From Diadema antillarum (Eukaryota), in contig NW_027270902.1 of assembly GCF_040938485.1 (NCBI RefSeq), forward strand, positions 1,364,001 to 1,428,000: a stretch of 64,000 nt of DNA. Direction: 5' to 3'. This document shows, one piece after another, positions 6,832 to 41,500 of this stretch (positions are counted from its first letter, which is position 1; every line of letters starts with the position of its first letter). The translations under genes and the position numbers were made by a program. Under the pieces are notes generated by a model. It was not told the DNA's origin. It saw only the letters and a program-made list of their open reading frames with translations, and ran no database searches.

Positions 6832-6974
6832 NNNNNNNNNNNNNNNNNNNNNNNNNNNNNNNNNNNNNNNNNNNNNNNNNNNNNNNNNNNNNNNNNNNNN
6901 NNNNNNNNNNNNNNNNNNNNNNNNNNNNNNNNNNNNNNNNNNNNNNNNNNNNNNNNNNNNNNNNNNNNNNNNNN
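6832..6974. other. Assembly gap (143 N)
   Basis: Run of n characters. Confidence 1.
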
Positions 6975-10959: not shown

Positions 10960-11500
10960 TTTGGCTTGCCATTATGCGCGTCTCTTCAGTCGAGGTACCG
11001 GTATTTGCCTCATATAAACACTGCTCATGCTAACAACTGCATTGCATGCATGCTGTGCTATCGATGCTGCATAAATGTATTTTATATGCAGCACCGCAGC
11101 AGCAGCAGTGCGAGCGAGCGATCATAGCCTTGTCCATGTGCATGCGAGAGACACGTCTACTCACAGTCACAATATCATCAAAATTGCCACCAACTTACTT
11201 TGTTCGACTGGGCGCTCCTTTTGATCTGGTTTACTCCACTTTACGTAGATGTTCAGAAGAGGTGTGTATTTGCGGTTTTGTGCAACTGCTCTTCAAGGCC
11301 CTAACTGAAATATTCTGTAATTTACGTGATAACTATAATAGCAGTACAGTCAACGGCGAGCTGTGCTGTTACTGTGGTGCCACGTACACTGCGTGCAGGT
11401 TTTTAGCGTTTCTTCACCCGAGCCGGCAGGCGCAACACACGGTGAAGTTCCGTTATCTCTCGGTGGGAGGCAGTGTGCAGTAACCAAGGCCACCAGCGAT
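10960..11500 (+). promoter_or_regulatory. Likely GUK1 promoter / upstream exon region
   Basis: CpG-enriched block about 2 kb upstream of the GUK1 acceptor at 13321, which needs an upstream exon. Several candidate donors occur here (gag|gtaccg, acg|gtgaag). Confidence 0.4.
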
Positions 11501-12811: not shown

Positions 12812-13332
12812 CAAAAGGTGTTGCAGTTTAGCTGGTGCATGATAAATATACCAGGTACACACTTGCACAGAGTGGGTGCACCTGCCTGCTGTACCTGGAT
12901 ATTCAAACTTACCCCTTGGGTATATTAAACATTCAGAGTAACACAGATTTTGTTCAGAGACATTTTTTTTTTTTGGGGGGGGGGGGGGCGGTTCGGCATG
13001 AGAATTTGTTTATCGGAGTATTCAGACACCTACAATGGGGTGAATTTGGTGAGTCTTACATCAACTATTGATTGCGTGAGAGTTGGCAGCCCCTTGTATT
13101 AGAGAGGGGGTATGTCGTAGGCTGTCTACTGAGAGTGTAAAGACAACCTTGGATATTACATTGTATACATTGAACTGTAGAATGTTACATCCTGGTAGGA
13201 ACCACCCTCCATCTACCCCATTCAAAAAATCACATGACTGTATGATATCCAACAAGAAACAGATTTTGCATGGTAAAGTAATCTTGAGGTAGTGTCACAT
13301 CACGTGTATCTCATTTTGCAGGTCTAACCATC

Positions 13333-16300
13333 ATGGCTGAATACATTCCAAGACCTTGTGTATTCTGTGGTCCATCAGGGTCAGGGAAGAGCACTTTGAT
13401 CCAAAAACTCATGGCTGAACACAAGGACATGTTTGGATTTTCCGTCAGCCGTAAGTAATTCTCTTTACAGTAAAATCCACACTTCCGGCATGAAAAGAAC
13501 AAATCTAGACCCAATCTGAAAAAAAGAGAGGTTCATGTAGATGAAGCTTCTTGGTTGTTTCCCCACTGTCTTCCTAAATCTTGCCATGAGGTGAGAGATG
13601 AAGGTTACAAATTGGTTTAATACAAAAAGCACCTCAGAAAGACTTTGACAGGTTGCATCATATTTATATCAGTGCTGGTTTTCTTATCAAATCAATATAT
13701 CTAATATTTGGCATTAATTGATTTTATTGCCTAAATGTCTTCTACTTTCCTTTATTGACCAGTGAGCAATGTGTCAATGAAATTCCACTTAACATTATTT
13801 CAGAAACTGCTCAATACCATATCTAAGAGCTTCTGCAAGAAGTAAAAATAGAAAAAAGAAAAAAAAGATGAATAAATGAGATTCATAGTGCATATTATCG
13901 ACTACCAAACAGTCATTGTTTGTACAGTACAAAGTACTGTAAAAGTGGTTTCTTTCGCGTACAGAAACTTTCGCGGTTTCCATCGGTGCCGACTTTTTCG
14001 CGTGTGTTTAAATTCGCGGTCGGTAATGATAGCGTTGTAACAAGCCACGAGTTCAAAACATTTTCGCGTGATGTTAAATTCGCGGTTCAACCTCAAAGCG
14101 CGAAAATAAAACCACCGCGAAAGAAACCACTTATACAGAAGAGTTCATCAAGAGTACCATAGTTTAGCTTTGTATACTATCAAATGTCTTGAAATGATAA
14201 TATTAATGCCAGCTATAGTGTACCATCCCTAAGAAAATACATGACAAATTTTATTTTATGTTGTCAGATACAACAAGGAAGCCAAGGCCTGGGGAGGAAG
14301 ATGGAGTCCGTAAGTAAAATGCTATCATCACCACTTTAGAGAGATTGTCATATTATAATCTCTTTAGATTGACCATTTCTGTTATTGTTCATTCCAATTG
14401 ACAGTTTGTTCTTTTACAATGTGATACTGAGGTTTGTGTGTTTGTGTGTGTGTTTTTATTGAATTGAGATCCCAAAAATGTTTAATCAAAATGTGACAGA
14501 AGGAACAGCCTGGGTGAATCTAATGTTGCTATCAAAATACAACGTATCTGTTCAGGAATGGCACCTGATTAATACCATTTGATGGCTAATTTTCCAGTTA
14601 GGTCTAACAAAGTTCTGAATAGAACTTTATATACCATGATCTAGTCGTCTTGTTGTTGTTGTTGTTGTTACCCATATGGCGGTCTCTCTCCTCTGTGCAT
14701 TGATCTGAAATCTTGATCCCATATTCAAGGCCCTTGCCTTCTTTTATCACCTCTTCTGTCTTTTTCAAATTCTACTTCAGATTTAATTGCATTTAGTATG
14801 TGAATGCCATCTGTCCATGTTGCAAGGAAATAACTAATTATTTAAAAGCAAATGGAAATTGATATTCACCTTAAATATATCTCATTTTGGTAGAAGAGTC
14901 ACCATCATCTTCCAGTTGCCCTGAAGCAAAACTTTGAAATAATGTTAAAGTCATTAAATACAATTTGCAGATTTTGAAGCAAAAACCCAGCTTTAGTGCT
15001 TAGGGATATTAGCAACCAGTGTAAAAATATTTAGCAGTATAATGAATGTTAAGTTTTGTTAGACAAACTGTGAACATTAGTTATTACAAAATTGTTTCTA
15101 GAATAAACCATCTACTGTTATGGTTTATTGAGAAATATAGTAATATATCCTCACATTTTAGGCTTGATTGCAAAGTTTTTATATGGTACCGATTGGTAGG
15201 ATGTTTTGTGATACAACTGACCTGCACATTGATTCATCAAATTTTTTAAATCACTGCTCCTAGTGGTAAACAATACGTTTGAATTAAAGCTAATTGATCC
15301 TTGGGAAAAATGTCAAATATTTACCAGAAGAGTAGTAGAATTTTGAAAACCTGAGAACTGTCTGTGAAATTAATCTGGTGATTTCTTTTCTTCTTCTTCT
15401 TCTTCTTCTTTAGATTATCACTTTACAACTCGTGAGGATATGGAGGCAGCTATAGCTAATGGAGAATTCCTAGAGAGTGCACAATTTTCTGGCAATTTGT
15501 ATGGAACAAGGTAAGTATTGGTCGTAGAATACTTAGTATTGTTTTCATTACTTGATTTCTGAATGATAATGACTTATGTACTTAAAATGTTCCCATCTCA
15601 ATGTAATTTTAAGCTTGTTAATGTAGGTTTTCATTACCCCCAATTCCTGAATAACGTAAGACCAAAGAGGAAAAAAAAAATCAAACCATCAGGAGAAACA
15701 AAAGATTGATAATTACATGTACTTTGTAACAATGTACAGATTAAAGTATACAATGATAGTAAAGATGGAGTATTGTATAGGAATCTACATGTCTCCATAC
15801 CATTTCCAATCGTTCTCTATGTTTACAGTGTGACAGACAGCACTATTCTCAGGGCATATTGTAGTCTTGATTCCAGTTTGAGTATGTCAATAAATAATAC
15901 AAAGTCACTATACTGTTGTTAAGCCCATCAAAACCTTCAGAGTAGCTTCAGGATCAGTGTGTCTGGGGTGCATTAAGGGCTTAATTTACCATTTGCAGAT
16001 AAAACAAACACCCAGCATTAGTGCTTTGAAATAGTTCTAAAATGTGAGTTAGGGATAGAGAAAAAAAAGACTGTAAAAATTTGAATCGGTAAAATCGATG
16101 TTAAATATATGTGAACAATAGTTATAGTACTTAGAAATGTTTCCAGACTAAACCATCTACAGTTACGGTTTATTGAGAAAATACAGATATCTCCATATAT
16201 TTTAGGCTTTATCTTGAAAGTTTTTATATGATAGGATGTTTTGTGGTACAACAGACCTAAACATATGCATTAAATGTCATATCTTGAAAAAAAATTAAAT

Positions 16301-19300: not shown

Positions 19301-21618
19301 GTATTGTAGAAGAAGCAAATACTCTTATGACTTCAAGAAAAAATAGAACTAGCCAAGAAATGGAAAGAATAGCAGAGGTGAGAGGAAAGTCTGACATCAC
19401 CTCTGACTGGATGATATCCAAGGTTGTGTGTTTGTAATCATGAAGTATTGTGTTATTGTTCACAGACCCATTGTATTCACAGCCCAGTCAACCTTGAGCT
19501 AGTAGTGCCATGCCTGCTTTCATCACGCAGTTAATTTGATTATTTCCCAAGAGCTGCCCCTTGAGGGATGGGGTTGCCATAGCAATGCCCATTCCAAAAC
19601 GTCTACAGTGCCCCATTTGCTGGTTATCACCCCTGAGTATGAAATTACCTTTTCCGTTTCATGTACACGTACAGTGTAATTGCTGCACAGCACTCTCTCC
19701 AGTACATTGTATGATGTCAAGGCAAAAAATGTTCAGTCAAAACTGACAAGCGCTCGTGAAATAAATTACATTGGCAGGTCTTTTGGACAATTTATGGCTT
19801 GGCCATTCTTTCAATGCTTTCAGGCCTTTGATCATTATGCATAGTGCTCTAGAATGCATTCACTGTTCCGTACATGTAATGTTCTTTTTTTTTTCATTAT
19901 TTTGCTTTAGAAAACTTTTTTTTTTTTACTGTACATGTATAGGCCTATTTCATCAGTTTTACTGGTTGCTAAGATGCAGGATAGTGGGCATATTTCATCT
20001 CTTCCTGTTTTAAAGTAATTTTCCACATAAAGCAGTTTATAAAAACAAGAAACTTGCACACTGCATTTCGATGACGTATTTAAATTGGCAGTGATATCAG
20101 TGTGATTTTTTTTTTTGATGTTATGTAAGAATCAGTGTCAGAAGTCTTTTTCTTTTTTGCCATAAAATCAATGATAATGTCATGATTTGATTATAAAAGC
20201 TCATAGAGATATACAATGGCACATTAAAAAACAGAGTGATTTCGTCCTTGGCGTTCAAATTCTGTGTGGCATGTTCTCATGAGTTTTATTAGCGTCATTG
20301 ATCCTGGTAATCAAGTTGTCAAGTTTGGGGACCAGAATATATTCTACTCTTTGCACAAAATTACAGGATACTTCTCATCATTATTATGCTCTGTTAAATT
20401 GTTATCAATCTGTGTAAATTTATACAGATACACGTGCATGTACATAATTTGTACTAAGATGAGAGACCAAGAATTTCATTCTGGCATTTTGTTAAAATGA
20501 TTTTGTATTTTACCTACTTGATAGTGACTTGGACTTGTCAGTAACATGGGTGATGAGGTTATTTCAGTTCCATCAGATGTTGTTTAACAAACTCAAAATC
20601 TGGTGTTGTATGTATTTTACAGCAAGAAGGCCGTACAGGACGTGCTGAATACAAGGCGGATTTGTATTCTCGATATTGATGTTCAAGGAGTGATCAGCAT
20701 CAAGAAGACAGACCTTAAACCAATCTACATCTTTGTCAAGCCTCCTAGCCTCAAGATCTTGGTATGTTACCACCACCATTACATTTGTATTATTTTGCAT
20801 ATATTCTATTAAATAAATCTTTTGCTTATCACCAGTTAGGGCTATCTTTCATGACCAGTTCATCTGTGTAACAACAAACAGTCAAACAAACAGTCAAACT
20901 CTAAAACCCAGCCTGCAAGAGAAAATGACTTTGAGAACAGTGATTCAGAATATACAGCTGTACATCTTTCTATGTACATTAAACCAAGCTGAGAATATGA
21001 AAAAGGGTATCAATTGACAGGCAGCTATTAAAAGAGATTGATAGTGTTATGCCAATGGGGGCAAAAACAGAAATTTTCATAATTTTTATATTGAATTATA
21101 TCTTGAATATCAAGCACTTTCTAGCTTGATATTTTGCAAACATATCGGAATCCATAAAATTGTTTATAGTTTCTAATTAGTACAGTAACCACTGACAAAG
21201 AAAAATCAATGTGCACCATCTTGCTGTCCAAACTAAATAGTCCAATGGTGTGTTTTATTCTAGACTGAGTTTTCATGTATAAAATGGAGAATAGACATGT
21301 GTGAAGAGGAAATAAAAGATTGCACTTCTTTTGATATGGCTTCTGAACATAATTATGTTAATAATACAATCTAGATCCATATCAATGTTTCTAGAAATTA
21401 TGATGCGTAAAAATAAACGTTATTAAACATTCTTATGTCTTTAGAACATACCGTATACCAGGGATGACATCTCATAGTGCTTTGTATCCAGTGGAAAAGG
21501 CACTCTAAAAATATCAACTGCATGTGTTATTATTATTATTATTATCAGTTATTATTATTATTAATGCAATTATTATTGTTATTATTGTCATTATTGTCAT
21601 TATTATTATTGTTATTAC

Positions 21619-21667
<49 letters not shown>

Positions 21668-22659
21668 TAAAAAAAAAAACAACCTAAGACTCTACTTATC
21701 CTTCTGCTCCATAGACAGCTATATGACCCACCCTTTCTGTGAGAGTCTAAACCTTTGTAGCCTTAATCACAGGATCTTGCAGGGTACGTTGGGCATTGGG
21801 TTAAAGGGAGAGATCAAATCCCAGCTGTAGTATATATACACCTTCATTTCGTACAGACTTTTATGAATGTTAGCAGCTGATGATAACTGTATTTGATCAT
21901 TGTCTTCCTGTCTGTGTATGACTGGATAAAACTCAACTCTTCTGTACATTGTGTCTGTAGGAAGAGAGATTACGTGGGAGGAAGACAGATACGGAGGAAG
22001 CCATACAAAAACGACTCGCCACGGCAACCAAAGAACTTGAATACAGTGAGTATGATGATGTATGTGGCCATTGTTTCTCAGAGCTGTGTCTGTATTCTTG
22101 AAAGTAATCTGACAGCTTTAATATAAATCAATCTCAAATTAGACACGTTGCTGTGATGTCCAGATAAAAGCTCAAATACAGCTTTGTATATTCACTTTCA
22201 CTGTGTGTGGTGGAGTTGGGAATGGTATAGGTAGAGCAAAATAAAGGGGGAGAGTAGTGATTAATTTTGAATCCTTACAATGTCATATTGAAGCTGTATG
22301 ATAGTCATGAGGGGGCATGGTATGTGTGAGATGTGAAGTAGATATAGAACTACAACACTCAAATGTGCTGGTAGTCAGTGTGACAAAAGATATGATGTGC
22401 ATGATATATACCCTGCATACCCTTTGTATTGATTGGAAAACTAATAACACTGTATATAACGTGTTTAATTTTTCTTTTCAAGTAAGTCTTTACAAGTGTT
22501 TCTTATTGTGTAAGTGCATGCCTCATGTACATGTAATATCTAGCACTATAAGATGGTGAGTTGCAGTTTGTATTATAGGCAAGTGGATGTATCTAGTTGT
22601 GTGTGTACTTGCTATTTATTAGTGTGTACACTGTGTCATCTTGTGGCCATTGTATGTTG

Positions 22660-22703
<44 letters not shown>

Positions 22704-25700
22704 TGACTTGTTGGTATATGTGACAAATGACTCCTTGCATGAACAAAAAACAAATGGATATCTTTTTTCAGTACAATACATACCTGATACTTTCCTAGAT
22801 TGTGTTCGATCAACTATGAGTTGTTTGATTCTTTTGTAAAAAGTACAAAAAAGAAGTATTCAACAATGATTGTTAATGTAACAGACTTTAAATACATATC
22901 AGGGAATAATTCTCCAACTCAAATTTGATTAGCAATTTCAGCGGGTGATCAATCTGTGCACTTCTATGGAAAAAAACTGCTACACAAAAGATAGTTTGTG
23001 TAGCTGTGGTAAAAAAATGCATAGCAAATTGCGATGCGATACCAGGAAAATTATTCCCTGCATATTGTATATCAATTTATCAACAGTATCCATGATTCAT
23101 ATTATAAACAATCAGAAAGATAAGTAATGAAAAAGAAACTAAGAATTTCTTTAAAAATTTTATTCTTCAGTTTTATCGACAGTATATCTATCGCTTTGCA
23201 AATTGTGACAACACTGTATTATTGTAATAATTTTTCTCTTCAATTTACAGTTAGCAAGGAAGAACCTCTAGAGGGCAGCACATATGTTGTCATAAATGAC
23301 AACTTACAATCGACGTACAGACAGCTCACAGAAATCCTAAATGATGAAATTGTCAGACTAAAGGCAGGCTAAGCAATCAAACAGTTCTGTTCTTTCAGTG
23401 TGCTTTGGTTCAGTAACACAGTTGAAAATAACCAATTAACAATATACAAAATGTAGATAGCCTAGAATGTTGCAATTTTAATGACATATAGACAGAGTAT
23501 TTGATAGTTTTTTTAATGATTACAGTGATAAATACTAATATGTAACAGACAGATGCAGATGAATAATGGAAACCATCAATTGAGGCATTGAGGTTTGGAA
23601 ACAACAAATATGCCATGAACCTCCTGAAATTTTAGTTATGAACACATTTTGATTTTTCACTAATGTAACACGAGTTGTTGTCAGTCAGTTTCATTCATAT
23701 AAATGTAGATTTGTGTCCATTTACAGTGGACTCGGATTATTCTGAAGTCCTCGGGACTGGCAGTTGTTTTTTTTTTTTTCGTTATATCGAAATTTTGTTA
23801 TACCGAACAAATAAACAATGATAAACATGGAGTGGATAATTTTTCGTCCTCATTTTTTACTTTGTTGTAACCAGAATTTTATTATAACCGTGTTCATTAT
23901 TTAGAACGGGAGTGCTCTGTAATTGGACCATATTATAGGAACCAGTTACTTTGTAGATATGTACAAAACTCAGACAATGGTTGTATGTTCTGCAAACAGA
24001 CTATGACTGAGCACTTAAGAGTCATAACCCCTTGTTTATGTGCCTTTAATTCTGGTTTTTTATTTGGGTTTAACTTTTGTCGTGTTTACTTTGCTGTAAG
24101 ATATTCTTGCTGTACATTTCAACCTGTTCCAACAACACTCATTAGCTGCCTTTTTTTACGGACTAAATATTCCATCTGTTAACATTCCCTTCTTGATAAT
24201 TTTTCTGTAGTTACCTTTTAGTTATTATTTAGTCCTGTGTATCAAGTTTTCTGTTTTATTTCACCAATATTTAATTAAATTTTCATTTTGAAGATATGAT
24301 TTTAGTGTTGTTATCACATGGAAATCATAACTTGTTGTAAATCTAGAATGTTAAATAGTGACAAGTATGTGCAGTCAAAGTTGTCTATAGCAGCCACCTA
24401 GAGAAGATGAAAAAAGTAGCTGTTAAAAACAGATGTATATGCTGTATACTGGGTCTTTAATGTGGCTTTCCTCTTGGGGAAAATTTTTTGATGGCTGTAC
24501 GTAATATGGCAGGTGGCCTCTATAGACAGGTGGCTGCTGAGGCAAGCTTGACTGTAATTGTTCTCCCTTCCAGTTTTACAATGATCTAGTTTGTGGAAGG
24601 TTTTACTCTGAAATGAAACCATACTAAACCTCTCTGGATGTGTACACTTGAGGGCCTGAACATCATAAAGTCCATAATAATCTAGACTTGATGCACTAAT
24701 GCTTTTAATGAGTGAAGGTATTTCTGTTACAGCTCAATACCCTGTCACAAAATTCCCATCCATGAAACAACACAAATCATTACTATCTATATTTTCTAAT
24801 TTGGCAATTTATGAGCACTCTTATGCGAATCAGTCATTTCAAGTGCATGCTGAATTGATGTATGCCAAGTAGCAAATTCCAACCATTCTTCTGTAACATG
24901 GTAACCTTAGTCGAGATCACTGTCACCATATCATCTTCAAATGTGGCCAAGGAGAGCATCAATGAGAATAATGGTCCCGAGACATCATCATTCTTATAAA
25001 GTGACATGAACACTTGATTTATGTACCCTACCATGTGTAGAGGCTTTTACAGAAAATAGAAGGAGATATTTTAGTCTGACACAGCTTCATATCAATGTAG
25101 GTTTATCCTGTGTCAAAAATATTGTGATATTGCCATAGCAGAGACAGCACTTGGGCTTAAGTGAGTGCTACAAATTTAAAGAAAAGGGCTCCATGCTACA
25201 TTCACATTACACCATATTCTGGTTTCAGGAAATGTTCATACAGAATAAAGGGGGAATTTTTTAACCAGTTAAGAAGTTTGTCTGATAAAGCAAGAGTTCA
25301 ATCTTCTAAGTACAGCAGTGAAAATTTGATAGAAATGAAGGAAGTTATGATATTGTGGAGTTTTGCTCATTTTCATAAAAATCTTTTTAAGCAGTCAATT
25401 CGAATAAATGAATGAGTTGAGGATGTCATCACCATACAATTTACCATGTAGTTTTACACAAAATCTTGCTTTAATTTTCTAGCTTTATTGTTCAAACTTG
25501 CTTATGTTTTAGTCTCATACCCTAATACAGTTGTATATGCTGTACATCTACCCAAGTATTCTGGTTATTCAACCAGGAAAAACATTATTTTTTGAACTTT
25601 AATAGCAGAAAATTTTTGATTTTTGTCAGTTTATTGTATAAGATCAAAGGAAATTTTGAGATAATGTCATCATCAGTTCACTCATTTGCATATCTGCTTT

Positions 25701-26004
25701 TTCATATTTTCATATCTTTGCTAATTTTTGTCAAATTTTGATCAAATTTTTACATCTTACTATTTCTTTTTGGAGATTAAGTTTGAATGGGTTTTAAATT
25801 CCACTGTAGGTCATAGATGAATTTCATTTTAAAGTTGAATTTGTTTCTTCTTTACTTTTCTCCCCGACAGTCAACAAGGAGACCGATAGCCAGGGAACTT
25901 TCATCATCGTGAATGATGATGTGGATGTCGCATATGAACAAATCAAAGGTATCCTCAGCACTGATATCATCAAATTGCGTGACCTGAAATTCAAGACCAA
26001 GTGA
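13333..26004 (+). CDS. GUK1: Guanylate kinase, spliced. Shared coding exons 13333-13450, 14268-14309, 15414-15510, 20623-20761, 21961-22045, then either terminal exon A 23251-23372 (200 aa) or terminal exon B 25871-26004 (204 aa)
   Basis: Joined translation [27 protein letters not shown]...[26 protein letters not shown]...[10 protein letters not shown]...[10 protein letters not shown]...IFVKPPSL...[19 protein letters not shown]. It contains the P-loop GPSGSGKS, the guanylate kinase signature SHTTRxPRxGExDGxHYHF, the YGTS motif and the LID arginines. All introns are GT-AG with matching phases (1,1,2,0,1). Confidence 0.96.
13935..14140. mobile_element. TA-flanked MITE with CTGTA...TACAG ends, CGCG-rich
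   Basis: TIR tactgtaaaagtggtttctttcgcg / cgcgaaagaaaccacttatacag. Related elements at 57259-57500, 58676-58886 and a decayed copy near 18963-19110. Confidence 0.8.
15098..16310 (+). repeat. Pair of ~165-bp diverged direct repeats (15098-15262 and 16143-16310) bracketing the GUK1 exon at 15414
   Basis: Both contain taaaccatctac.gtta.ggtttattgagaaa...ttttaggctt...aaagtttttatatg...taggatgttttgtg.tacaac.gacct...taaatcactg. Confidence 0.75.
21527..21666. repeat. (TTA)n microsatellite, imperfect
   Basis: Direct inspection; explains the poly-Leu ORF 21477-21830. Confidence 0.95.
22661..22700. repeat. (TG)n microsatellite
   Basis: About 20 TG units. Confidence 0.95.
23251..23372 (+). CDS. GUK1: GUK1 alternative terminal exon A: (I)[39 protein letters not shown]
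   Basis: Acceptor tttttctcttcaatttacag. Phase 1 matches the donor at 22045. Matches the guanylate kinase C-terminal pattern (hydrophobic strand-N-D-x-L...A/T-Y-x-x-L...I-L). TAA at 23370-23372. Confidence 0.85.
23722..23921 (+). mobile_element. pogo/Tigger-like MITE (TA-CAGT...TG-TA), copy 1, in the 3' region of GUK1 exon A
   Basis: tacagtggactc ... gagtgctctgta. A homologous copy lies at 34096-34291. Confidence 0.75.
24372..24554. mobile_element. Tigger-like MITE
   Basis: cagtcaaagttgtctatagcagccacct ... aggtggctgctgaggcaagcttgactg-ta. Confidence 0.6.
25871..26004 (+). CDS. GUK1: GUK1 alternative terminal exon B: (I)[43 protein letters not shown]
   Basis: Long polypyrimidine acceptor ttgtttcttctttacttttctccccgacag. 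Phase 1 matches the donor at 22045. The [14 protein letters not shown] segment matches the guanylate kinase C-terminus. TGA at 26002-26004. Confidence 0.88.
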
Positions 26005-29000
26005 TGGCCCAGTTCTAGCAGGGCTCCCTCTGAATGTAGAGTGCAAAGAATGTGATCGTGGAGTTAGACTGGGGCTAGCTATTGCACCTTGATTCGGCAT
26101 TGATTTCTGTCTTGTGAACGTGGTTTACATGCACATTTTATATTTATTATACTGTACTTTAATGGATGTTTCTGTAGTGTGGCAAAGGCATTGTAATAAT
26201 CACAATGTAGACTGTATAATGTTACAATCTTGCCCCCAACTAGGCATCAAATGCAACTGAACAAACTTGTAACTTATCAAAGTCATTACTGTGTGTGAAT
26301 TTTGTCCTAGAACTCCCTGTATTGATCATAGTGGCTTATATCTTTGTTGTGTTGTTTTCCTTCTTAGATACAAAGTGTAATAGAAAGTTGTAATGGTTTT
26401 TGTGTCAAAAGGGGTACTAACTGCTTTTTGACAGTCAGAATAATTACAGAATGTCTCATCTGAAAGGCTTGAAATTTTTAACCCTGAGATTAGCGCATTC
26501 AGAATATCCGTTACAATCTAAGCCATTTATGTTGTTGATGTAGTGAATATGTAAAGGTTACAGTTTTCCATGGCAGCCATTTTCATAACATTACTTCCAG
26601 AACAGCACAGGTTGCACCTGCATTGTCTCCCATTTTATTGCTTTCCTAACCCTCATCAGGCTCGGCTTTTTGGCTAGATGCTAAAACCGGAGGGGGGTGA
26701 ATTCCGCACACCCACCCCCCAACATTGGTGGCTTGTACATCATAAAAACTTCCAAAAGTCATTTCAATTCTTATGTACACCATTATTGTGTTCAGAATTT
26801 CTTACGTAATGTACTTCCTTGCTTTTCAACTTTTTTTTTTTTTTTTAATTGGATATTGTCACTGACCACTTTTCTACTATAATTAGCCTAAAATCATTCA
26901 ATCAAAGTGATCAATCGTAAAAATAATCAAGTTTTCTTTAGTTTCATGACAGAGCACGGTTTTCCATAGGAAGTGTACACAAAAACACAAAATTATGACC
27001 ATTTTGAGGTGATGCGCTGTTATAAAACCGGGCGTGGCTTTGTTAAAAAGTACGCATGGACATCGCAAATTTGGTCTCAAAAGTTGCGCAAGACATGAAC
27101 GAGAAAAGTCTTAAAGATAGCACCATATGTTCAATCATTTTGTATTATTTGGCACATGGGTATGTTAATGTGAAGATGTTCTGTCTATGGGCAAACATAA
27201 GCAAATACTCCACTTTCACACAGTTATGTTAACATTCAGTGTATGTATGAATAGTATTTACATAATTTGTATTACATGGAGAGACCAATTTAACTCACCA
27301 ATGAACCTTTTACTGTTGATATCTGTCTCTCTAGGTAAGACACAAATTCCATTGATACTTGTAATCCATTGTCACTGTCTTGGGCAAGCCTCAGAAACTC
27401 AAGCTTTCTCATTTCTTTTTTTGTTTTGTTTTGTCATTTGACCTTCTTTAAACTACAATGTATGTGTTTATAAGTTATGAGTACTTCAGAGAAAAAAAAA
27501 GAAGAGTGTATGAAGCAGTTTATATGAGCAATGCAAATCATAAATACACTAACCATTACGACACAAGTGTTTGTATAGGATTTGCATCTGTAGTGATTTT
27601 TCTTATTTGTCTGTGATATGATACACAGATTGCTGCGAGGAACAAGAAAAGGATTATGTTTTACAAAGCTAGCATCTATGAAATGATGTGGCAGATGTGT
27701 GATATATTTAGTTTTGTCAAAATATGTTTGATGTATAGACACAGTTGAATAAGATATATGGTAAAAAGTTCATCATGTTCAAGAAGTAATTTGTACAGTG
27801 ATGCATGGCTGAAATCTTCACCAGCGAATACATTGGTTAAGCTTACAACCTGTACAAGTCATTCAGGGATGTATTTAAAGTGTGACTGGTCTGTTCACGT
27901 AGCTGCGTGTACCTAATGCATGTAATGTCTGTAGGTTGGAGGAGCTCATCAGGCAATGTTTAATGTTTGAAAATACTGTGAGAAACGTGTCGTACACTGA
28001 AAGTATTTGCTGAAATGGCAGAGGAATATCAGAACAGTTTGAAATTGATGCCACAAGAAAACAATGTCATCTCAATGTTTATTATGTTACACAGTATGCT
28101 ATCTTTAATATAGATATAAGTGGTCAAAATTATATGATTTGGTACATGATGTGTGTCTCATTACACTTTGATTGTATCTCTTGTTTGCATGATAATGTAG
28201 TGGAAAAGGAGACACGAGACCTGAACAAATCACCCGTTATCAGATTTGAATTTTACCTGCTTTTAGTCTTTGTTGCAGATATGTGTCATACCCATAGCTA
28301 TCAAGACAAACAGGATGAATGTCGAGTCTGTATTCTTCATGGACCCGATGACATGATGGGTCGTAAAATGAAAGTTATGTACTTGCAGATGTACAGTTTA
28401 GGTTTGTGTGTGTGATGTTTCCCAGTGGTACAGATATGAGTGTGGTGAGCTTTTAAACAAGAGAATATTAGTGGCTTCAAATGGTGTCTTTACGATTGTG
28501 AGTTTGTTTATGTACATTTAGGCGATATTCAGACATACATAGGTCTTGATCATAAATGGTAATTGTGGGAAATTTCCTATTTTGCACAGTGCAAACACAA
28601 ATACAGCATATGAAGGTATATCAATGAATGAGCAATACAGAAAACTTGACTGTTGTATTTCCTACAGGCAATTTCTTCCCTGAATTCTTCGATAGCATTG
28701 TATGATATAGTACATGTATGACAAAATATCAGTGCCAATAAGCTGCTGCAGTACCTTGTATGTATGTTTAAATTTGCGTATGAAAGATCCTTCAAATTAT
28801 GATCAATTGTAGAATAACTAGATAACAATTAAAAAACAAGTTTCTCACACTCCAGTCTCACCAATATATGTAATAACCACCATCATTGAAAAGATGGTTA
28901 TGATGTGATTAATATGATTTATGAAGAGGGAGTGATCTGTTGATAAATTGTACAAGTGTATTTGGAAGTAAATCGAACAAAGTTTGATACATGTAGTGGA

Positions 29001-29441: not shown

Positions 29442-31073
29442 AGATTCTTGTCATGGTGAATGTGTCACTGAAGATTCTTATCTTGAGAATAGTGCGTTCA
29501 AATATAACGTAATAACAGTACCAACTATGGGTAAATGGAACATACTGGTACATGTATTTTAATGATAAAACAAGGAAATATAGATTTGTTAGGATTCATG
29601 CACTCTTCAAGTTATAAGTTCTTCTCCATTGTCTTGAAAAAAAAAATAGATTGTGTGTGATTTAAGCTAAACTTATAATTTCATTAACAGGGTGTCTGTT
29701 GGTCCATTCCAAGGCATTTTCTAAGAGCTGTATGACATTTTCTATTTCTCCATGACTAGAGAAATAGTTTGTATGTGAAGAAGCCTTCCTATGATTTGTG
29801 CTTGTCAAGAGGCATGTTTTGCAAGGAGAGTACTAGCATGTGATGCACACTTGAATGTTTGTGCCTTTGTAGTATTTGTTATTTTTTAAATCAATTTATA
29901 ATTTGTCATCCTCGATGTTGTAAGATGTGAATGATGAGGTAACATTGTAGGTGCTTATAATTCATCAGTTATTAGTAAATAGAAAAGTGCTAACCAGGGG
30001 TGCTGCTTTTGCCTTTTAGCAAAAATCACATCTATACATGTATCTACACTGTAGTATAAGTGTACATTGTGTGTATGACCCATCAACATTTACTGTTGCA
30101 GATGAGCTGATTCCCATGACACACATTTCCTACAGACAACTGTTAGAGAATACTCAGAACTTGCTTTATTAAATGGGTTAATTCAGATTACAAGTCAAGA
30201 CATTAGACTCAAAAAGATACGGGGAGATGATTTGCTAACATTTTTACAGTAATTACTACAAAATTTAAATTTCGTTATCACATTCAGGCCAAATGTCAGA
30301 TTCAAAGGATTATATTAAAGCTTTTTGTTATCCATGAAGCATGTATTCAGTAACAGTGGTGTTTAGAATTACATGTACATATTGTAGGGCCTACCCATTG
30401 TCTTTATAGGCTGTATTGTCTACATGCTTGGCTGCATCTGTAGATTTCCTCTAAACTATTTTCTGAGTGCTCGCTATGTTACTGTTGTGTGGGTCAAATT
30501 AGACTAAGTAGGCACATTAGAAATGATGGCCATATTCTGAACCCAGCAAGGGAGTACCCTGGATCTGCCATGAACAAACTTGCAGTTCATGAGGATGATG
30601 GTAGAGCCCAATTTTCAAATACCCACTGTATTGATTTTATCGTTTTATTTTGTGTATTCTGGATACACAAAAGTAAGAAAAAAAGGAGTAAAAAAACAGT
30701 TAAGTAGAGAAACCGAAATAAGCAGCTTACTACTGCTGTAATGGTACAGCAGTTTCCATCTGAAAAAAAAGCAGTGTTTTCTAGAACTCCTTGAATAACC
30801 AATGTTTTCATGACTTTGTAGAAAATATGGTCAAGTTTTTATAGCTTAATACATTATTATCAGTTCAAATAGGAAGAAATCTGTATATTTTGGATGAATT
30901 TGAATTGCTGTTTCTATTGTAATCATTGTACTGTAGAATATTTTGATTATTTGATATTGGACCCTTAGTAACATGTAGCCATTGTTTTCAGCTTCCTGGA
31001 GTTCGCTGTGTCCTTGTGTTGCAAGTAATGAAAAATCACTACAAGTAGGAAAGAAAATCATGTTAGACTGAAA

Positions 31074-33841
31074 TACAGTCAACCTCGCGTAAGTCGACAT
31101 AATCGGGACTGAGCAAAACACGTCGACTTACGCGAATGTCGACTTACGCGTAAGTCGACATTTTGTCGACTTATAAATGAAAACTAATTTCCCCTGTACA
31201 GAGTAAGATTTGGATCACGATGCGGATCGCTACCCAAATCTTACTCCTTTTGCCGCCAAAACATGCCTACTGACATCAGCAACAATAATGTTTTAGTTCA
31301 TGCATAAATCTCGCGCGGGTTAGTAACGACAACGCACAATTCCCAAATCTCTAGAGAGATTTTGAGAGAGCGGGATCGGAAACCTAGGCCCGTTTCTAGA
31401 CACTTTACGTCTTAAACTTGATTTGAAATATCAAACGCAAATTCCCCAAAATTGCATTAAACTTTGCGATTTAAATTCAAGTGCGTTGCTGCGAAGATGT
31501 GCGTGTGGTTTCGCATGATTCTGTCGAGATAAGTTTTCAGTGCCGACTGAGTTGAAATATGTGTCGCCATATTTGTTCTGTTTAAATTTGTATTGCCATA
31601 CTCTGAAAATGAATTGTTCTCGCGCTCCTATTCGCAACATTACAGCTCTGTACGGCGCGGGCCCGTCTGAAATAAAAAGAAGAAGAAAAGTTTGTTTGAA
31701 AACGACATCTTTCAGACTACTATAACCTTCGTAAAAACAAACCTCTTTCCATTGTCGGACTAATTTAATTAACTTTGGACTGAGATTTAAACCTAAATAT
31801 TCGGCATAACGAACTTTAACAATAATTCGTTGTCATTTTTTCATTGACATTTTGTGAAGCAGCATGCGTTTCGGCAGTTTGAAACGTGTGAATGTTGCGA
31901 TGTCTTTCCCCTGCAAGTGCAGACTAAGTTCGGTCACGGCGAAAGTTCCGTTACGAAATAAAAAATAATGCTAGACTTTTCTACCATAACGCACTTCCGT
32001 AAATTTTTATGCGTGTAAACGCAGTTTCTGGTTTCGGACAAAACCTGCAAGTCTTTTCTGCAACGCTCTTGCTTTTTAAATACAGCGTTGCTTGTGATTT
32101 GACGGACTTGCATTTGATTTTTAGAGTTGCGTTTAAACGCAAATGAGTTTAAATTTCATACAATTTTCTAGTTTCGTATGATTATCAAACGCAAGTCTTT
32201 TCAGCGTTCCGTGTGATTTGATGGACTTGCATTTGATTTTCAGATTTGCGTTTAATTTTTAATTTTGCTTACGAAATGAAAAATAATGCAAGTCTTTTAA
32301 ACAATAACACACTTCCGCAGATGTTTAGAGATGCGTTTAAACGCAATTTCTTATAGTTTCGTACAAAAACCGCAAGTCTTTTCTGCAACGCTCTTGCGTT
32401 TGAATACATGGTTATGTGTGATTTGATGGACTTGCATTTGATTTTTAGAGTTGCGTTTAAACGCAATTGAGTTTAAAAAAGTTCCCTACAATTTTCTAGT
32501 TTCGTATGATTATCAAACGCAAGTCTTTTCAGCGTTCCGTGTGATTTGATGGACTTGCATTTGATTTCTTATTTTGCTTACGAAATAAAAAAATAATGCA
32601 AGTCTTTTAAACAATAACACAACTCCGTAGATGTTTAGAGATGCGTTTAAACGCAGTTTCTTGTAGTTCCGTACAAAAACCGCAAGTCTTCTCTGCACCG
32701 CTCTTGCGTTTAAATACAGCGTTACGTGGATTTGATGGACTTGCATTTGTTTTTTAGAGTTGCGTTTAAACGCAATTGAGTTAAAAAAAGTTCCCTACAA
32801 TCTTCTAGTTTCGTATGATTATCAAACGCACGTCTTTCAGCTTTCCGTGTGATTTGATGGACTTGCATTGGATTTTCAGAGTTGCGTTTAATTTCTAATT
32901 TTGCTTACGAAATAAAAAAGTAATGCAAGTCTTTTCAACAATAACGCACTTCCGTAGATGTATAGAGATGTTTTTAAACGCAGTTTCTACTTTCGTACAA
33001 AACCGCAAGTCTTCTCTGCAACGCTCTTGCGTTTAAATACATCGTTGCGTGTGATTTGATGGACTTGCATTTGATTTTTAGAGTTGCGCTTAAACGCAAT
33101 TGAGTTTCAGGTTCGTACAATTATTTTCTAGTTTCATATGATTATCAGACGCAAGTCTTTTTAGCAACGCACTTGCGTTTAAATGCAAAAGTTGCGTGTG
33201 ATTTGATACACCTGTATTTGATTTTTTTTTAGTTGCATTATTAGTTGCATTGTAATAAATTTTCTAGAAAGGGCCTAGGTTTTAATACCGCTTCGGAATA
33301 ATTAACGTCAGAATATTCGGATTTACAAAAACATTTCATGTTCGGATAATGAATACCTACTGGGTCATAGTTAAGTGTACAGAATTTTTGCGTTTTGAGA
33401 AAAACGAGAGGGAGAAAAGGGGTAAAGTGAACTGCCTTGGGTATTACATGTAATACTCCAGTGTAAATGAGTGTATGCCCTTTCTATTCTGGGATACAAG
33501 ACAACGGACGCATGGCGCGAACGCTATCCCGCGCCGTACACTAGCGAATAACCGAATAGAAATGCAGCGAATCGGAGCGGGAAAACAATTCTTTTTCAGA
33601 GAATGGCGATAAGACTTTGAGCGAAAAATTATGTCGACTTAGACGAGGGAATTAACACGTATTTCCGCTCAGTTGGCACTGAAAAATCAGGTCGACTTAC
33701 GCGAGTTGTCGACTTATAAATGTCGACTAAGACGAGGAAATTTTCAAGGAATAACAAAGGCAAAAATCGGGACTTTTTTATTGTGTCGACTTAAGCGAGT
33801 TGTCGACTTATGCGATGTCGACTTAGGCGAGGTCTACTGTA
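31074..33841. mobile_element. 2.77-kb non-autonomous pogo/Tigger-like element with subterminal GTCGAC repeats and an internal satellite
   Basis: TA-flanked TIR cagtcaacctcgcgtaagtcgacat / atgtcgacttaggcgaggtctactg. Clusters of gtcgactta at both ends. No transposase ORF. Confidence 0.85.
31951..33240. repeat. Higher-order tandem repeat: four ~310-330-bp units, each built from shorter subrepeats
   Basis: Unit starts ttacgaaat.aaaaa.taatgc at 31951, 32269, 32578 and 32905. The subrepeats gtgatttgatggacttgcatttgatttt..agagttgcgtttaa and aaacgcaagtctt recur two to three times per unit. Confidence 0.9.
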
Positions 33842-38530: not shown

Positions 38531-41500
38531 TTAATTCAAAATATGATTTAAGAATATAGCTCAAAAAAGAAATAATAAGTATTGAAGGAGACAACCTTGA
38601 CAGTGAGGTTGGATACAAGAATCTGCCTTACAGTACCACAAGGGAATTCATCAGGTCCCATATAACCTTGCATGCTAACCTATGGGAAACTGAAGTTTCT
38701 TTTCTTACTCTCATTCGGACAGCTGCAATGAGCTGTGCAGAATAGAAGCAGAGCTCCACTTTCTACATATTGAACATAATTCAAGTTTTTTTAAACACAT
38801 ATGCGATGCATGAAAATAACATGATCCTACATGAGTTCCTTCTGATCATGGAAATGCTTGATTTGATGATGACTTACTGTACACAAAGAAGGAGATAATA
38901 ACTTACCAATAAATGAATCTTGGGGAGATGACAAAAACAGGGCTCTCCTCACTGACATATTCTCACCAACTTGACCGATGGTCAAAGCTGTTGAGTCTTC
39001 CACAGTCTTGTTGTTTTCATCCACAAGAGTCTTCAGATCATCTCTTCCTAAAGAAATCTATAGAGGAACCAAAAATGCATTATCACACAATGATAGATGA
39101 ATATTTATACCATTGCATCAAACACTTTTATTTCTTGGTTACAGTGGCAGATAATCAAGATTGACCATTAAATTTATTTGAGAATACAAAAATTTAAAAT
39201 AACAAACTTTAAATTGATTACATTCATAAAACATGCTGGTTGAACAAAACAACTCACTGAACCACCTTGAAATTGAAAACTTCTCAATCATGATTAAATT
39301 GACAATACCAGTATTACATACTGGTGCTTGGCATGAGCACTAACACCTTTAGAGTGTATGACAGTATGGCTTTACCTCACAAGGGTAGCTCACTTTTACT
39401 CACTTTGACTATTTCTTGGTTGGAACTCTTCTCTCTTTGGCTGGCTAGAGTTGTGGCAGCAACATGGCTAACAAGGTGCTGGAATTTGGAATTTCGAGCG
39501 ACAAAGTCAGTCTCACAGTTCACCTGTGAAGTAGGATAGAAAGTCAAATGTAAAACTAGAGAATAACTTAGAATCACAAACACAACTAAACTTTGTGACT
39601 CACATTCTATAACACAGTAACATTTCAAGGAGAATGAAATCCAAACATCATACATACAGAGACTCCAACCCAAAGCACCTTTTGATCTGGAGATTCTCCC
39701 GCCTGAAACCCCTAGCAAACGGGAGACTCCAAGTTGATGTGTGCGAAGCGCGAAGTTCCTAGGGTTCTAGATGCTCTCTGGTGCTATCTAAGGCTTATTT
39801 TTTCAACATACAATAGCAATAGGTAAGAAATCCTTTCCAACGGGAGACACAGAGCCAGGGCGGGTGAAATTAAATCTCAAACGGGAGAACGGGAAATTTT
39901 GCAAAAATGGGTTTTCGGCGGGAGATCTCCCGTCGAAAACGGGAGAGTTGGAGTCTCCAGGCTGTGATGTCGAGCATGGACAACCATTTACAGAAAATAT
40001 AAAGAAAAATCACCATATTTTCACTTTTTATGCCTCCGCCAACGAAGTGGCCGGAGGCATTATTTTAGTATAAAATCAAACAGCACTTGACTTACCTCTT
40101 TAAGAAAGCAAGGGGGGGAAATATTATCCTTTACATATAATGTTCATCAGCAGCAAGTCAAGGAAATGTGTACTTTTAATGACAAATGAAATTTTGTGGA
40201 ATTCGCTTATATATTCTTTATATTATTGTCCTTCAGTGACATCACAAACTGTTGTAGCCTTCTCATCAAGTGATGGCAATGGTGACTCTTTTCAACTGAT
40301 TGTCAGATTTGCCCCAATCTTCATTGATGTGTTTAACTAATATTGCTGCATTCACTTAATCAACAAACCACATATTTCGGTTTCATTCCTCTTTAGTGAA
40401 CTCTCTGCCACATGAGTTAAAATCAATAACTGAGGTAATTTGGTAATTATGAAAGCATCTTGCTTGCTATATGCAAGAATAGAGTCTTTACTATCTAAGC
40501 TGGGAAGAAATGACACTAGCTTTGAAACTTGAAACACTGACAAGACAACATCACATAGTTTCTAAATGAAGCAGCCGAGCTCACCTCTACCATGACAGCT
40601 GCATTGTCTTGACACAAGACTCCGATCAAACCCTGGGCTGTCACTCGTCCTTGAAGCTTGGTGGCCTTACTCCAGCCTTCCTTCTGGGCCTGCTCTCTCA
40701 ACCAAACCTCAGCCTGAAAGAAAATCAAAAATATTTAAGTGCTGTACCTGTCCATTGTCCTGGAAACACATACTCATGACATGTTTAAGGTTATTAGATA
40801 GTGATAAGATATATGATTAGAATATTCATGAACAAGAAAGCAAATCTAAGAGCACAGACCTCTGCCGAGCAGCTCATTTCCACCAATGATCTAGATCAGT
40901 TGTGCTTCCGCAAGAGATCTGTGATTTCCACTCATAATGCATGCATGCTAAAAATTGCCCATTTTCCCAATATAGAAGCCCTTTGTTTACATCACAAGCT
41001 TCCAGCTGCAGGGTGCCTCATCCAAGTAGAGAATGCATTGTAGAGTGTGTATACATGCAAACCCCAAATATGAGCAGCTTGAACGCCCAAGTTCAATGAC
41101 ACTATTTGTCAAAAGATTACAAATTCCTAGACCAGTACCAAAACTCTATAATCTGTTCCCCCTGTCATTATCAACTTTTCCTGAAGGTTTCGGGCAAATC
41201 TGTTCATAACTTTTTGAGTTATTTTATATACAAACAAACAAAAAAATGAATGCTGGCAAAAAAATTACCAAAAAAAAAAATAACATAAAACATAACCTCC
41301 TTGGCAGAGGTAATTAACTGGAGGTACCGGTACATGAACACTTTATTTGCAGTTCACATTGTCACTTTTATAATTTCTCTCTGAAAAAAAAAAGGGAATC
41401 TCTATGCAAATTCATTTAAATAATAAACATCATATAATAGAAACAAATCTTCACAATCAAAACAAAGAAAGTGACATACAGACATATGTAATCAGATAAT

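What the first reader, a model, noticed from the sequence alone, without database searches (positions are those of the whole stretch)
23251..26004. Guanylate kinase with two duplicated, deeply diverged alternative terminal exons
Seen: after the shared exon ending ELEY(a| at 22045 there are two separate phase-1 acceptors. Each opens a stop-terminated frame homologous to the guanylate kinase C-terminus. A = [40 protein letters not shown]; B = [44 protein letters not shown]. By hand they share only about 13 of 40 aligned residues, yet both keep the strand-N-D motif, the Tyr and the amphipathic helix pattern. No other GUK exons lie between them, so this is exon duplication, not gene duplication. 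Established: this C-terminal segment of GMP kinases completes the CORE sheet and carries the ND motif next to the ATP adenine site. Inference: both exons have stayed under selection for a long time, and alternative 3' end choice switches between two enzymes differing in nucleotide-site loop, C-terminal tail (B has a basic KFKTK tail) and 3' UTR. I do not know of this arrangement being described for GUK1.
Basis: partly seen in the sequence, partly recalled or inferred. Interest (0 to 1): 0.82.

Follow-up and report, generated by a model that had tools for sequence, protein, structure and literature searches.

The report
Sea-urchin guanylate kinase alternative end exons
The guanylate kinase gene of the sea urchin Diadema antillarum carries two old, diverged copies of its last coding exon, a pair shared by four of the five echinoderm classes; gene models of other echinoderms already list both protein forms, so this is a real but unstudied example of a well-known kind of alternative splicing.

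Summary
The window is Diadema antillarum (100% identical to GCA_040938485.1). It holds one guanylate kinase gene: five shared coding exons, then two homologous, stop-terminated exons, A (23251-23372) and B (25871-26004). Both open at a phase-1 acceptor after exon 5.

A is not a relic. It sits at the same place, in the same phase and with an intact frame in four other sea urchins, two starfish, a brittle star and a crinoid. I did not detect it in a sea cucumber or an acorn worm. A tree groups all A copies together, which points to one duplication in the echinoderm stem. B is the ancestral type, with a basic K-F/Y-K tail.

RefSeq already lists A-type and B-type proteins as X1/X2 isoforms in at least eight echinoderm species. 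Diadema has only B annotated. I found no paper on the pair.

In three sea urchins the models splice A onward to B through a GC donor 9 nt before the end of A's stop codon, and other classes have GT donors at or just after A's stop. A therefore looks like a stop-carrying cassette exon, as in KRAS 4A/4B.

I could not test transcripts in Diadema: no run was listed. The scan found the same kind of event in this genome before (AUH, cathepsin C).

The parts
11249..11261 (+). Upstream first coding exon (ATGTTCAGAAGAG|gt). It gives the 8-residue N-terminal extension MFRRGLTI of the annotated protein.
   Evidence: sequence and donor. The Diadema RefSeq proteins P0252 and P0408 begin [12 protein letters not shown]. 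The gene starts at L005:10001, which is window 11249.
13322..13450 (+). Exon with the internal ATG (13333) and the P-loop GPSGSGKST. The donor is phase 1.
   Evidence: Pfam PF00625 E = 4.3e-7.
14268..14309 (+). Exon 2, (H)[13 protein letters not shown], part of the GMP-binding region.
15414..15510 (+). Exon 3, (H)[31 protein letters not shown].
   Evidence: Pfam PF00625 E = 4.5e-9.
20623..20761 (+). Exon 4, (S)[46 protein letters not shown].
   Evidence: Pfam PF00625 E = 5.4e-12.
21961..22045 (+). Exon 5, [28 protein letters not shown] plus one base. This is the shared phase-1 donor (gtgagt) used by both A and B.
23251..23372 (+). Exon A: the alternative, derived copy of the last coding exon (39 codons plus TAA). 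It ends ...RLKAG and has no basic tail.
   Evidence: Conserved in D. setosum, S. purpuratus, L. variegatus, L. pictus, Acanthaster, Patiria, Amphiura and Anneissia.
23364..23369 (+). Candidate GC donor (AAG|GCAGGC), 9 nt before the end of the TAA. If used, A (113 nt) joins B and B is read out of frame, giving ...[17 protein letters not shown].
   Evidence: The same site, AAG|GCAGGA, is the only junction that fits the RefSeq X1 proteins of S. purpuratus, L. variegatus and L. pictus. The Diadema read-through was computed. Its use in Diadema is inferred, not shown.
25871..26004 (+). Exon B: the ancestral-type last coding exon (43 codons plus TGA) with the basic tail LKFKTK. It is the only end annotated for Diadema.
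   Evidence: The K-F/Y-K tail is shared with starfish, a crinoid, one sea cucumber (Holothuria), acorn worms and a ribbon worm.

Best explanation
This is a tandem-duplicated last coding exon used for a homologous C-terminal swap.

The duplication happened once, in the echinoderm stem lineage, after the split from hemichordates. B keeps the ancestral form and is the default last exon. A lies in the last intron and is included only in some transcripts.

When A is included, translation ends in A or just after it. The last ~40 residues are then replaced by a diverged homologous copy that lacks the conserved basic K-F/Y-K tail. Those residues form the final strand of the CORE sheet, with the adenine-binding Asn, and the C-terminal helix.

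In sea urchins the most likely route is cassette inclusion: exon 5 joins A, and the GC donor AAG|GCAGG (9 nt before the end of A's stop) joins B. B is then read out of frame for 12-13 codons. A-only termination (...RLKAG*) may also occur. Because the upstream exon carries the stop, the two ends exclude each other at the protein level without any need for mutually exclusive splicing. This is the KRAS 4A/4B arrangement.

Shown: the exon pair, its conservation and age, and the fold compatibility of both ends. Inferred: which junctions Diadema uses, and that the two enzymes differ in function. The confidence given covers the core claim, that A is an ancient, selected, alternative coding exon. For the cassette route through the GC donor in Diadema itself I would say about 0.6.
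For: - **Anatomy.** Searches give the exon structure and show that only the last exon is duplicated.
- **Conservation.** Exon A has the same position, phase and length (39 codons plus TAA...RLKAG*) in S. purpuratus, L. variegatus, L. pictus and D. setosum. Between exon 5 and B, S. purpuratus and L. variegatus align only at exon 5, at A (with 47 nt upstream and 22 nt downstream) and at B.
- **Selection.** For A, dN/dS is 0.15/0.35 (S. purpuratus vs L. variegatus). Against Diadema, dN is 0.28-0.39 with dS saturated.
- **Depth.** The order exon 5, A, B holds in Acanthaster, Patiria and Amphiura and in the crinoid Anneissia. Holothuria and Saccoglossus show a single end exon.
- **Tree.** The A copies form one clade (support 82/76) and the outgroups separate (94/89). 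Class-wise duplications fit worse (lnL lower by 7.2 and 12.9; p-AU 0.07 each).
- **Public isoforms.** A-type proteins include S. purpuratus X1 (XP_030829768.1), L. variegatus X1, L. pictus X1, Acanthaster X2, Asterias X2, Patiria X3, Amphiura X2 and Anneissia X2. B-type partners exist in the same genes.
- **Donor sites.** A donor-like site lies beside A's stop in every class.
- **Structure.** AlphaFold models give strand plus helix at pLDDT above 90 over most of the swapped segment for both ends (it falls to 86 and then 58 in B's tail). The A-type model matches human GMPK over 195-197 columns, TM 0.83-0.90.
- **Active-site residue.** The adenine-binding Asn is present in both exons and invariant in 35 aligned sequences (PMC12297293).
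Against: - No transcript evidence for Diadema. No run was listed, and the RefSeq annotations of D. antillarum and D. setosum give only the B protein.
- The RefSeq isoforms elsewhere are computed models, and I could not see their read support.
- AAG|GCAGGC is a weak, non-canonical donor.
- Between the two Diadema species A has 4 non-synonymous and 0 synonymous changes, while B has 0 and 7. That could mean relaxed protein constraint on A in this genus, although A's DNA is still more conserved than the intron (3.3% vs 8.6% substitutions, P = 0.02).
- The tree rests on 43 columns, and the AU tests do not reach 0.05.
- The AlphaFold alignments mixed A and B types, so similar folds were partly to be expected.
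Confidence: 0.8

Rival explanations
1. A is a true alternative last exon with its own 3' UTR and poly(A) site, and the choice is made by alternative cleavage and polyadenylation. The A protein then ends ...RLKAG.
For: - The TAA stop sits at exactly the same codon in all five sea urchins. A site used only as an intron would not need that.
- An older L. pictus RefSeq protein (XP_054751962.1, P0391) ends ...RLKAG.
- An AATAAA lies 438 nt after the stop in D. antillarum.
Against: - Conservation between S. purpuratus and L. variegatus stops 22 nt after A's stop, against 104 nt after B's.
- No poly(A) hexamer is shared in position among the species, and none exists between A and B in Acanthaster.
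- The current RefSeq X1 proteins of three sea urchins require an A-to-B splice.
- GT donors lie 0-39 nt after A's stop in starfish, brittle star and crinoid.
Confidence: 0.25
2. A is a regulatory 'poison' cassette. Its inclusion mainly lowers the output of the B enzyme, through an early stop and mRNA decay, and the A-type protein has no role of its own.
For: - A carries an in-frame stop upstream of the last exon junction.
- Synonymous change in A is low: dS is 0 in both close species pairs and 0.35 against 0.75 for B. This fits RNA-level constraint on an alternative exon.
Against: - A regulatory stop exon has no need to keep a guanylate kinase C-terminus for about 500 million years. A keeps the hydrophobic strand, the invariant Asn, the A/T-Y pair and an amphipathic helix in four classes, and it models as a normal strand plus helix.
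- The stop lies within about 40 nt of the candidate donor, or the frame runs into the last exon. By the mammalian rule (my own knowledge, untested in echinoderms), that position escapes decay.
Confidence: 0.1
3. A is a dead relic in Diadema. It once functioned but is no longer spliced in this genus, and its open frame is left over.
For: - Only B is annotated in both Diadema species.
- All four A differences between D. antillarum and D. setosum change the protein.
Against: - Frame, acceptor (tttacag), length, stop and the GC-donor motif are all intact in both Diadema species.
- A diverges less than the surrounding intron.
- There are no indels or stops after more than 200 million years of separation from camarodont urchins (that age is from my own knowledge).
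Confidence: 0.05

Closest known systems
KRAS exons 4A/4B (and CDC42): alternative homologous last coding exons
   Same: Two tandem, homologous 3' coding exons. The upstream one is optional and carries its own stop, so the downstream one is then untranslated or out of frame. The enzyme core is unchanged and only the C-terminal segment is swapped. One version has a basic tail. The pair has been conserved for hundreds of millions of years (PMC9882654).
   Different: Here the swapped part is a structural strand plus helix of a nucleotide kinase and includes an ATP-contacting Asn. It is not a disordered membrane-targeting tail. The event is specific to echinoderms. In sea urchins the models use a GC donor upstream of the stop, so a short out-of-frame tail from B is added.
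Tandem duplicated exon substitution events (Kondrashov and Koonin 2001; Letunic 2002; Abascal 2015; Martinez-Gomez 2021/2022)
   Same: A homologous exon pair made by tandem duplication, ancient, with conservative changes and one used per protein. C-terminal swaps are a known and enriched subclass: 77 of 236 human events (PMC9741552).
   Different: GUK1 does not appear in the main text of that paper. I did not check its supplements, and I did not open the 2021 paper. This event is absent from the vertebrate-type genes seen here. It lies in echinoderms, which have no such catalogue.
RefSeq isoforms X1/X2 of echinoderm guanylate kinase (e.g. XP_030829768.1 / XP_030829769.1 of S. purpuratus)
   Same: They are the orthologous exon pair: same position, phase and length. 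The A peptide is 55-58% identical to Diadema's and the B peptide 61-64%.
   Different: They are computed models without published study. The Diadema annotations lack the A isoform, so for this genome A is a new, unannotated exon.

Membership tests
Guanylate kinase (GMP kinase, Pfam PF00625) | P-loop GxxGxGK[ST] and a Pfam match above the curated cut-off | tested here: met
   GPSGSGKST lies in exon 1. Exons 1, 3 and 4 each score above the 25.2-bit cut-off on their own (30.2, 36.7 and 46.2 bits). The spliced protein is 99.5% identical to RefSeq 'guanylate kinase-like [Diadema antillarum]'.
Guanylate kinase (GMP kinase, Pfam PF00625) | GMP-site residues (S-H-T-T-R, the Y..Y pair, E) | tested here: met
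   [21 protein letters not shown] is present. S39, H40, T41, R43, R46, E49 and Y55 are invariant in the 35-sequence alignment.
Guanylate kinase (GMP kinase, Pfam PF00625) | Adenine-binding Asn (human N171) after the last CORE strand, in each alternative end | tested here: met
   The N of VVINDN (A) and of IIVNDD (B) both align to chain position 171 of human and mouse GMPK. The residue is invariant across A and B types (N176 of alignment A5). Its role is taken from PMC12297293.
Guanylate kinase (GMP kinase, Pfam PF00625) | Catalytic activity of each isoform | not testable with these tools
   This needs recombinant enzyme assays.
Tandem duplicated exon substitution (homologous alternative exons) | Two neighbouring exons homologous to each other, with the same splice phase | tested here: met
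   32% identity, 70% similarity, E = 4e-8. Both have phase-1 acceptors after the same donor.
Tandem duplicated exon substitution (homologous alternative exons) | Both copies conserved in other species under purifying selection | tested here: met
Tandem duplicated exon substitution (homologous alternative exons) | Transcripts that use one or the other copy | tested here: inconclusive
   No run was listed for Diadema, and no short A-containing protein fragments were found. RefSeq models of at least eight other echinoderm species show both forms, but I could not see their read support.
Alternative last exon with its own poly(A) site | A cleavage and poly(A) site between A's stop and B | tested here: inconclusive
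   AATAAA lies 438 nt after the stop in D. antillarum, but no hexamer is conserved in position and Acanthaster has none. Conservation ends 22 nt after A's stop.

The most novel reading that the evidence does not exclude
Echinoderms have kept, for roughly half a billion years, a splicing switch that makes two GMP kinases from one gene. One has the ancestral basic K-F/Y-K tail. The other has a rebuilt adenine-site strand and helix and no tail. The two would differ in ATP handling, partners or location, and sea cucumbers would have lost the switch. This would be a rare case of isozyme-like regulation of guanine nucleotide supply through a swap that touches the active site of a housekeeping kinase.
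Probability: 0.4. Interest if true: 0.55.

Novelty: new member of a known kind. Interest (0 to 1): 0.4.

Why it matters
Guanylate kinase is the only route from GMP to GDP and is usually treated as a one-form housekeeping enzyme. Here one gene offers two C-terminal ends, both including the Asn that holds the adenine of ATP, and echinoderms have kept both since before their classes split. That gives a clean natural experiment on what the C-terminal strand, helix and basic tail do. It can be tested directly in sea-urchin embryos. It also adds an unannotated coding exon to the Diadema gene model. It does not change how alternative splicing is understood, because C-terminal swaps from tandem exon duplication are a known and common subclass.

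Tried and rejected
- **Sequencing runs.** The look-up of sequencing runs on 20500-26400 listed no run and used the only search. Read laying was therefore impossible and no junction reads were seen.
- **Pfam on the terminal exons alone.** No hit at E up to 1, because the peptides are too short.
- **Exon-4 search.** phmmer of exon 4 against the 50% representatives gave only distant GUKs, at most 77% identical. It served just to obtain a full-length protein id.
- **First profile search.** It was dominated by the bee protein used as scaffold, but it still surfaced the Diadema protein.
- **MAFFT fragment alignment.** The last three exon fragments were misplaced, so they were left out.
- **Short protein fragments.** A search for fragments carrying exon 5 plus A found nothing. 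This is uninformative.
- **Non-longest isoforms.** The look-up of encoding contigs failed for them. The longest isoforms had to be found through cluster lists.
- **Repeat or transposon origin.** No repeats link A and B, and there is no DNA similarity outside the coding part. I rejected this.
- **Second GUK gene in the window.** Rejected.
- **Independent duplications in each class.** These fit worse but are not formally rejected (p-AU 0.07).
- **Literature.** Searches found only MAGUK papers and nothing on a GUK1 exon pair.
Full report
**1. What is in the sequence**

Exon 5 ends ...GAA TAC A at 22045 and is followed by gtgagt. Two acceptors follow.
- At 23251 (after tttacag) the frame reads (I)[39 protein letters not shown], with TAA ending at 23372.
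- At 25871 (after ccccgacag) the frame reads (I)[43 protein letters not shown], with TGA ending at 26004.

I located the rest of the gene from stop-to-stop frames and splice sites.
- ATG at 13333; exon 1 runs to 13450.
- Exon 2: 14268-14309.
- Exon 3: 15414-15510.
- Exon 4: 20623-20761.
- Exon 5: 21961-22045.

Splicing these gives proteins of 200 residues (A end) or 204 residues (B end). Exons 1, 3 and 4 each pass the Pfam guanylate kinase threshold on their own.

The two terminal peptides are 32% identical and 70% similar, E = 4e-8. Every Protein Data Bank match of each is the C-terminus of a guanylate kinase, residues 167-192, at weak E-values. A tblastn of both spliced proteins against the whole window finds exons 1-5 once and only the last exon twice. 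No repeat or DNA similarity links the two copies outside the coding part, so the duplication is old.

**2. Whose genome, and what is annotated**

The window is 100% identical over 14 kb to D. antillarum assembly GCA_040938485.1, contig JBFRCO010000014.1. The RefSeq protein 'guanylate kinase-like' of D. antillarum and D. setosum has 212 residues. It equals my B isoform plus an 8-residue N-terminal extension (MFRRGLTI), which comes from a tiny upstream exon at 11249-11261. No A-type protein is annotated for Diadema.

**3. Is exon A alive?**

I fetched the orthologous loci and searched them with both ends.
- In S. purpuratus, L. variegatus, L. pictus and D. setosum, an A-type exon lies between exon 5 and B. 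It has the same acag|TT acceptor, the same phase and exactly 39 codons plus TAA, and it ends ...RLKAG.
- Between S. purpuratus and L. variegatus, only three blocks align from exon 5 to past B. These are exon 5, exon A (with 47 nt upstream and 22 nt downstream) and exon B (with 104 nt downstream). A is therefore a conserved island in an intron that otherwise cannot be aligned.
- Pairwise rates are:

| Pair | Exon | dN | dS |
|---|---|---|---|
| S. purpuratus vs L. variegatus | A | 0.15 | 0.35 |
| S. purpuratus vs L. variegatus | B | 0.12 | 0.75 |
| Diadema vs camarodonts | A | 0.28-0.39 | saturated |

- The close pairs are odd. D. antillarum vs D. setosum has 4 non-synonymous and 0 synonymous changes in A, against 0 and 7 in B. 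L. variegatus vs L. pictus has 3 and 0 in A. These are small numbers. Low synonymous change with a raised dN/dS is what is generally reported for alternatively spliced exons (my own knowledge), and A's DNA is still more conserved than the Diadema intron (3.3% vs 8.6% substitutions, P = 0.02).

**4. How old is the pair?**

The same order, exon 5 then A then B, is present in the starfish Acanthaster and Patiria, the brittle star Amphiura and the crinoid Anneissia. In the sea cucumber Holothuria leucospilota and the acorn worm Saccoglossus, only one terminal exon was detected.

A maximum-likelihood tree of 29 terminal-exon peptides (43 columns) puts all ten A copies in one clade (support 82/76). 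All B copies fall on one side of a branch (79/74), and seven outgroups stand apart (94/89). Forcing A and B of sea urchins together costs 7.2 log-likelihood units, and of starfish 12.9 (p-AU 0.07 each). That is disfavoured but not formally rejected. With the shared position and phase, one duplication in the echinoderm stem is the simplest reading.

B keeps features of the outgroups. These are a Gly in ..K/R-G-I/F-L.. and the basic K-F/Y-K tail seen in acorn worms and a ribbon worm. B is therefore the ancestral type and A the derived copy.

**5. What public models already say**

Cluster listings and the C-termini of the members show both forms as RefSeq isoforms.
- A-type: S. purpuratus X1, L. 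variegatus X1, L. pictus X1, Acanthaster X2, Asterias rubens and A. amurensis X2, Patiria X3, Amphiura X2, Anneissia X2.
- B-type partners exist in the same genes.

The arrangement is therefore in the databases, although I found no paper on it.

**6. How inclusion works**

The three sea-urchin X1 proteins end ...RLK-SMTRPPPTQPSS or ...RLK-SMKRHPQTQPSL. Those tails are exon B read in another frame. The only junction that gives them is a donor right after the Lys codon, AAG|GCAGGA, which is a GC-AG intron into B's normal acceptor. Diadema has AAG|GCAGGC at the same place. Its use would give ...[17 protein letters not shown].

Other classes have a GT donor at or shortly after A's stop.
- Acanthaster: TAG|GTATGT, 38 nt after the stop.
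- Patiria: TAG|GTATGT, 27 nt after the stop.
- Amphiura: GTAGGT, about 27 nt after the stop.
- Anneissia: TAG|GTAAAT, at the stop itself.

Acanthaster has no poly(A) hexamer between A and B. All this points to A as an optional penultimate exon that carries its own stop, with B then serving as 3' UTR. This is the KRAS 4A/4B design (PMC9882654).

The TAA is conserved at the same codon in all five sea urchins, and an older L. pictus model ends ...RLKAG. I could not decide between the models for Diadema. The single run search listed nothing, and a search for short A-containing protein fragments was blank.

**7. What the swap changes**

In human GMPK, N171 makes two hydrogen bonds to the adenine of ATP and is needed for ATP binding (PMC12297293). 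That Asn is the N of the ND motif in both exons and is invariant in 35 aligned A-type, B-type and outgroup proteins.

AlphaFold models give a strand and a long helix for the swapped part in both forms.
- A-type protein (L. pictus P0391): strand 171-175, helix 179-199, pLDDT 91-97.
- Diadema B protein: strand 178-182, helix 186-211, pLDDT 97 falling to 58 in the tail.

The A model matches human GMPK over its full length, TM 0.83-0.90. The alignments mixed both types, so this shows compatibility rather than proof. Both forms should therefore be active kinases. They differ in the residues around the adenine-site loop, in the surface of the last helix, and in the presence (B) or absence (A) of the conserved basic tail. 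What that tail does is unknown.

**8. Comparison and verdict**

C-terminal swaps made by tandem exon duplication are a known and enriched class: 77 of 236 human events (PMC9741552). This is a new, unstudied member of that class. It is notable for three things: its age, its location in a housekeeping nucleotide kinase, and the fact that the swap includes an ATP-contacting residue. For the Diadema genome it adds an unannotated coding exon.

Earlier notes of this scan describe the same kind of event in two other genes of this genome, AUH and cathepsin C. I did not test them.

Noticed in passing
window 11249-11261: A 13-nt first coding exon (ATGTTCAGAAGAG|gt) adds MFRRGLTI before the internal start at 13333. 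Starfish, crinoid and acorn-worm orthologues have longer N-terminal extensions rich in R, F and L that look like mitochondrial presequences, alongside short-start isoforms. The gene therefore seems to vary at both ends.
   Followed up: partly
L010 (Holothuria leucospilota) 39664-42114; L011 (Saccoglossus) 29821-31130: Only one terminal exon was detected after exon 5 in a sea cucumber and an acorn worm. The sea cucumber lineage may have lost exon A. Apostichopus also has an unusual B tail without the K-F/Y-K motif.
   Followed up: partly
P0252 vs P0408 (D. antillarum XP_071488592.1 and XP_071488618.1): The D. antillarum assembly encodes two near-identical guanylate kinase proteins on different contigs (3.8 Mb and 2.15 Mb), one residue apart over the 204 compared. 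This is probably an uncollapsed second haplotype rather than a paralogue.
   Followed up: no
P0288 (L. pictus XP_054749674.1, withdrawn model): This old model reads exon 2 in the wrong frame (QDLGNRMEF) and rejoins the frame in exon 3. It looks like an artefact of an assembly error, and it was filed as a separate gene from the B isoform.
   Followed up: partly
P0412 vs P0287 (Lingula anatina X1/X2): The brachiopod guanylate kinase isoforms differ only in the last ~11 residues (...DIDTLRKDKLKQH vs ...DIQKLRGGMEGY). This is a separate, smaller alternative C-terminus in another phylum.
   Followed up: no
window 21505-21684 and 22650-22702: Long simple repeats lie in the introns on either side of exon 5. 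One is a trinucleotide run that reads as poly-Y, poly-I or poly-L in the three frames. The other is a (TG)n run of about 50 nt.
   Followed up: no
window 6832-6974: A run of 143 N (assembly gap or masked stretch).
   Followed up: no
L001-L004, L006, L007, L009 downstream flanks: The gene for mitochondrial elongation factor Ts (EF-Ts) lies tail-to-tail downstream of guanylate kinase in sea urchins, starfish and a crinoid. A Beclin/APG6 gene lies upstream in starfish and the crinoid. This is a conserved micro-synteny block.
   Followed up: no
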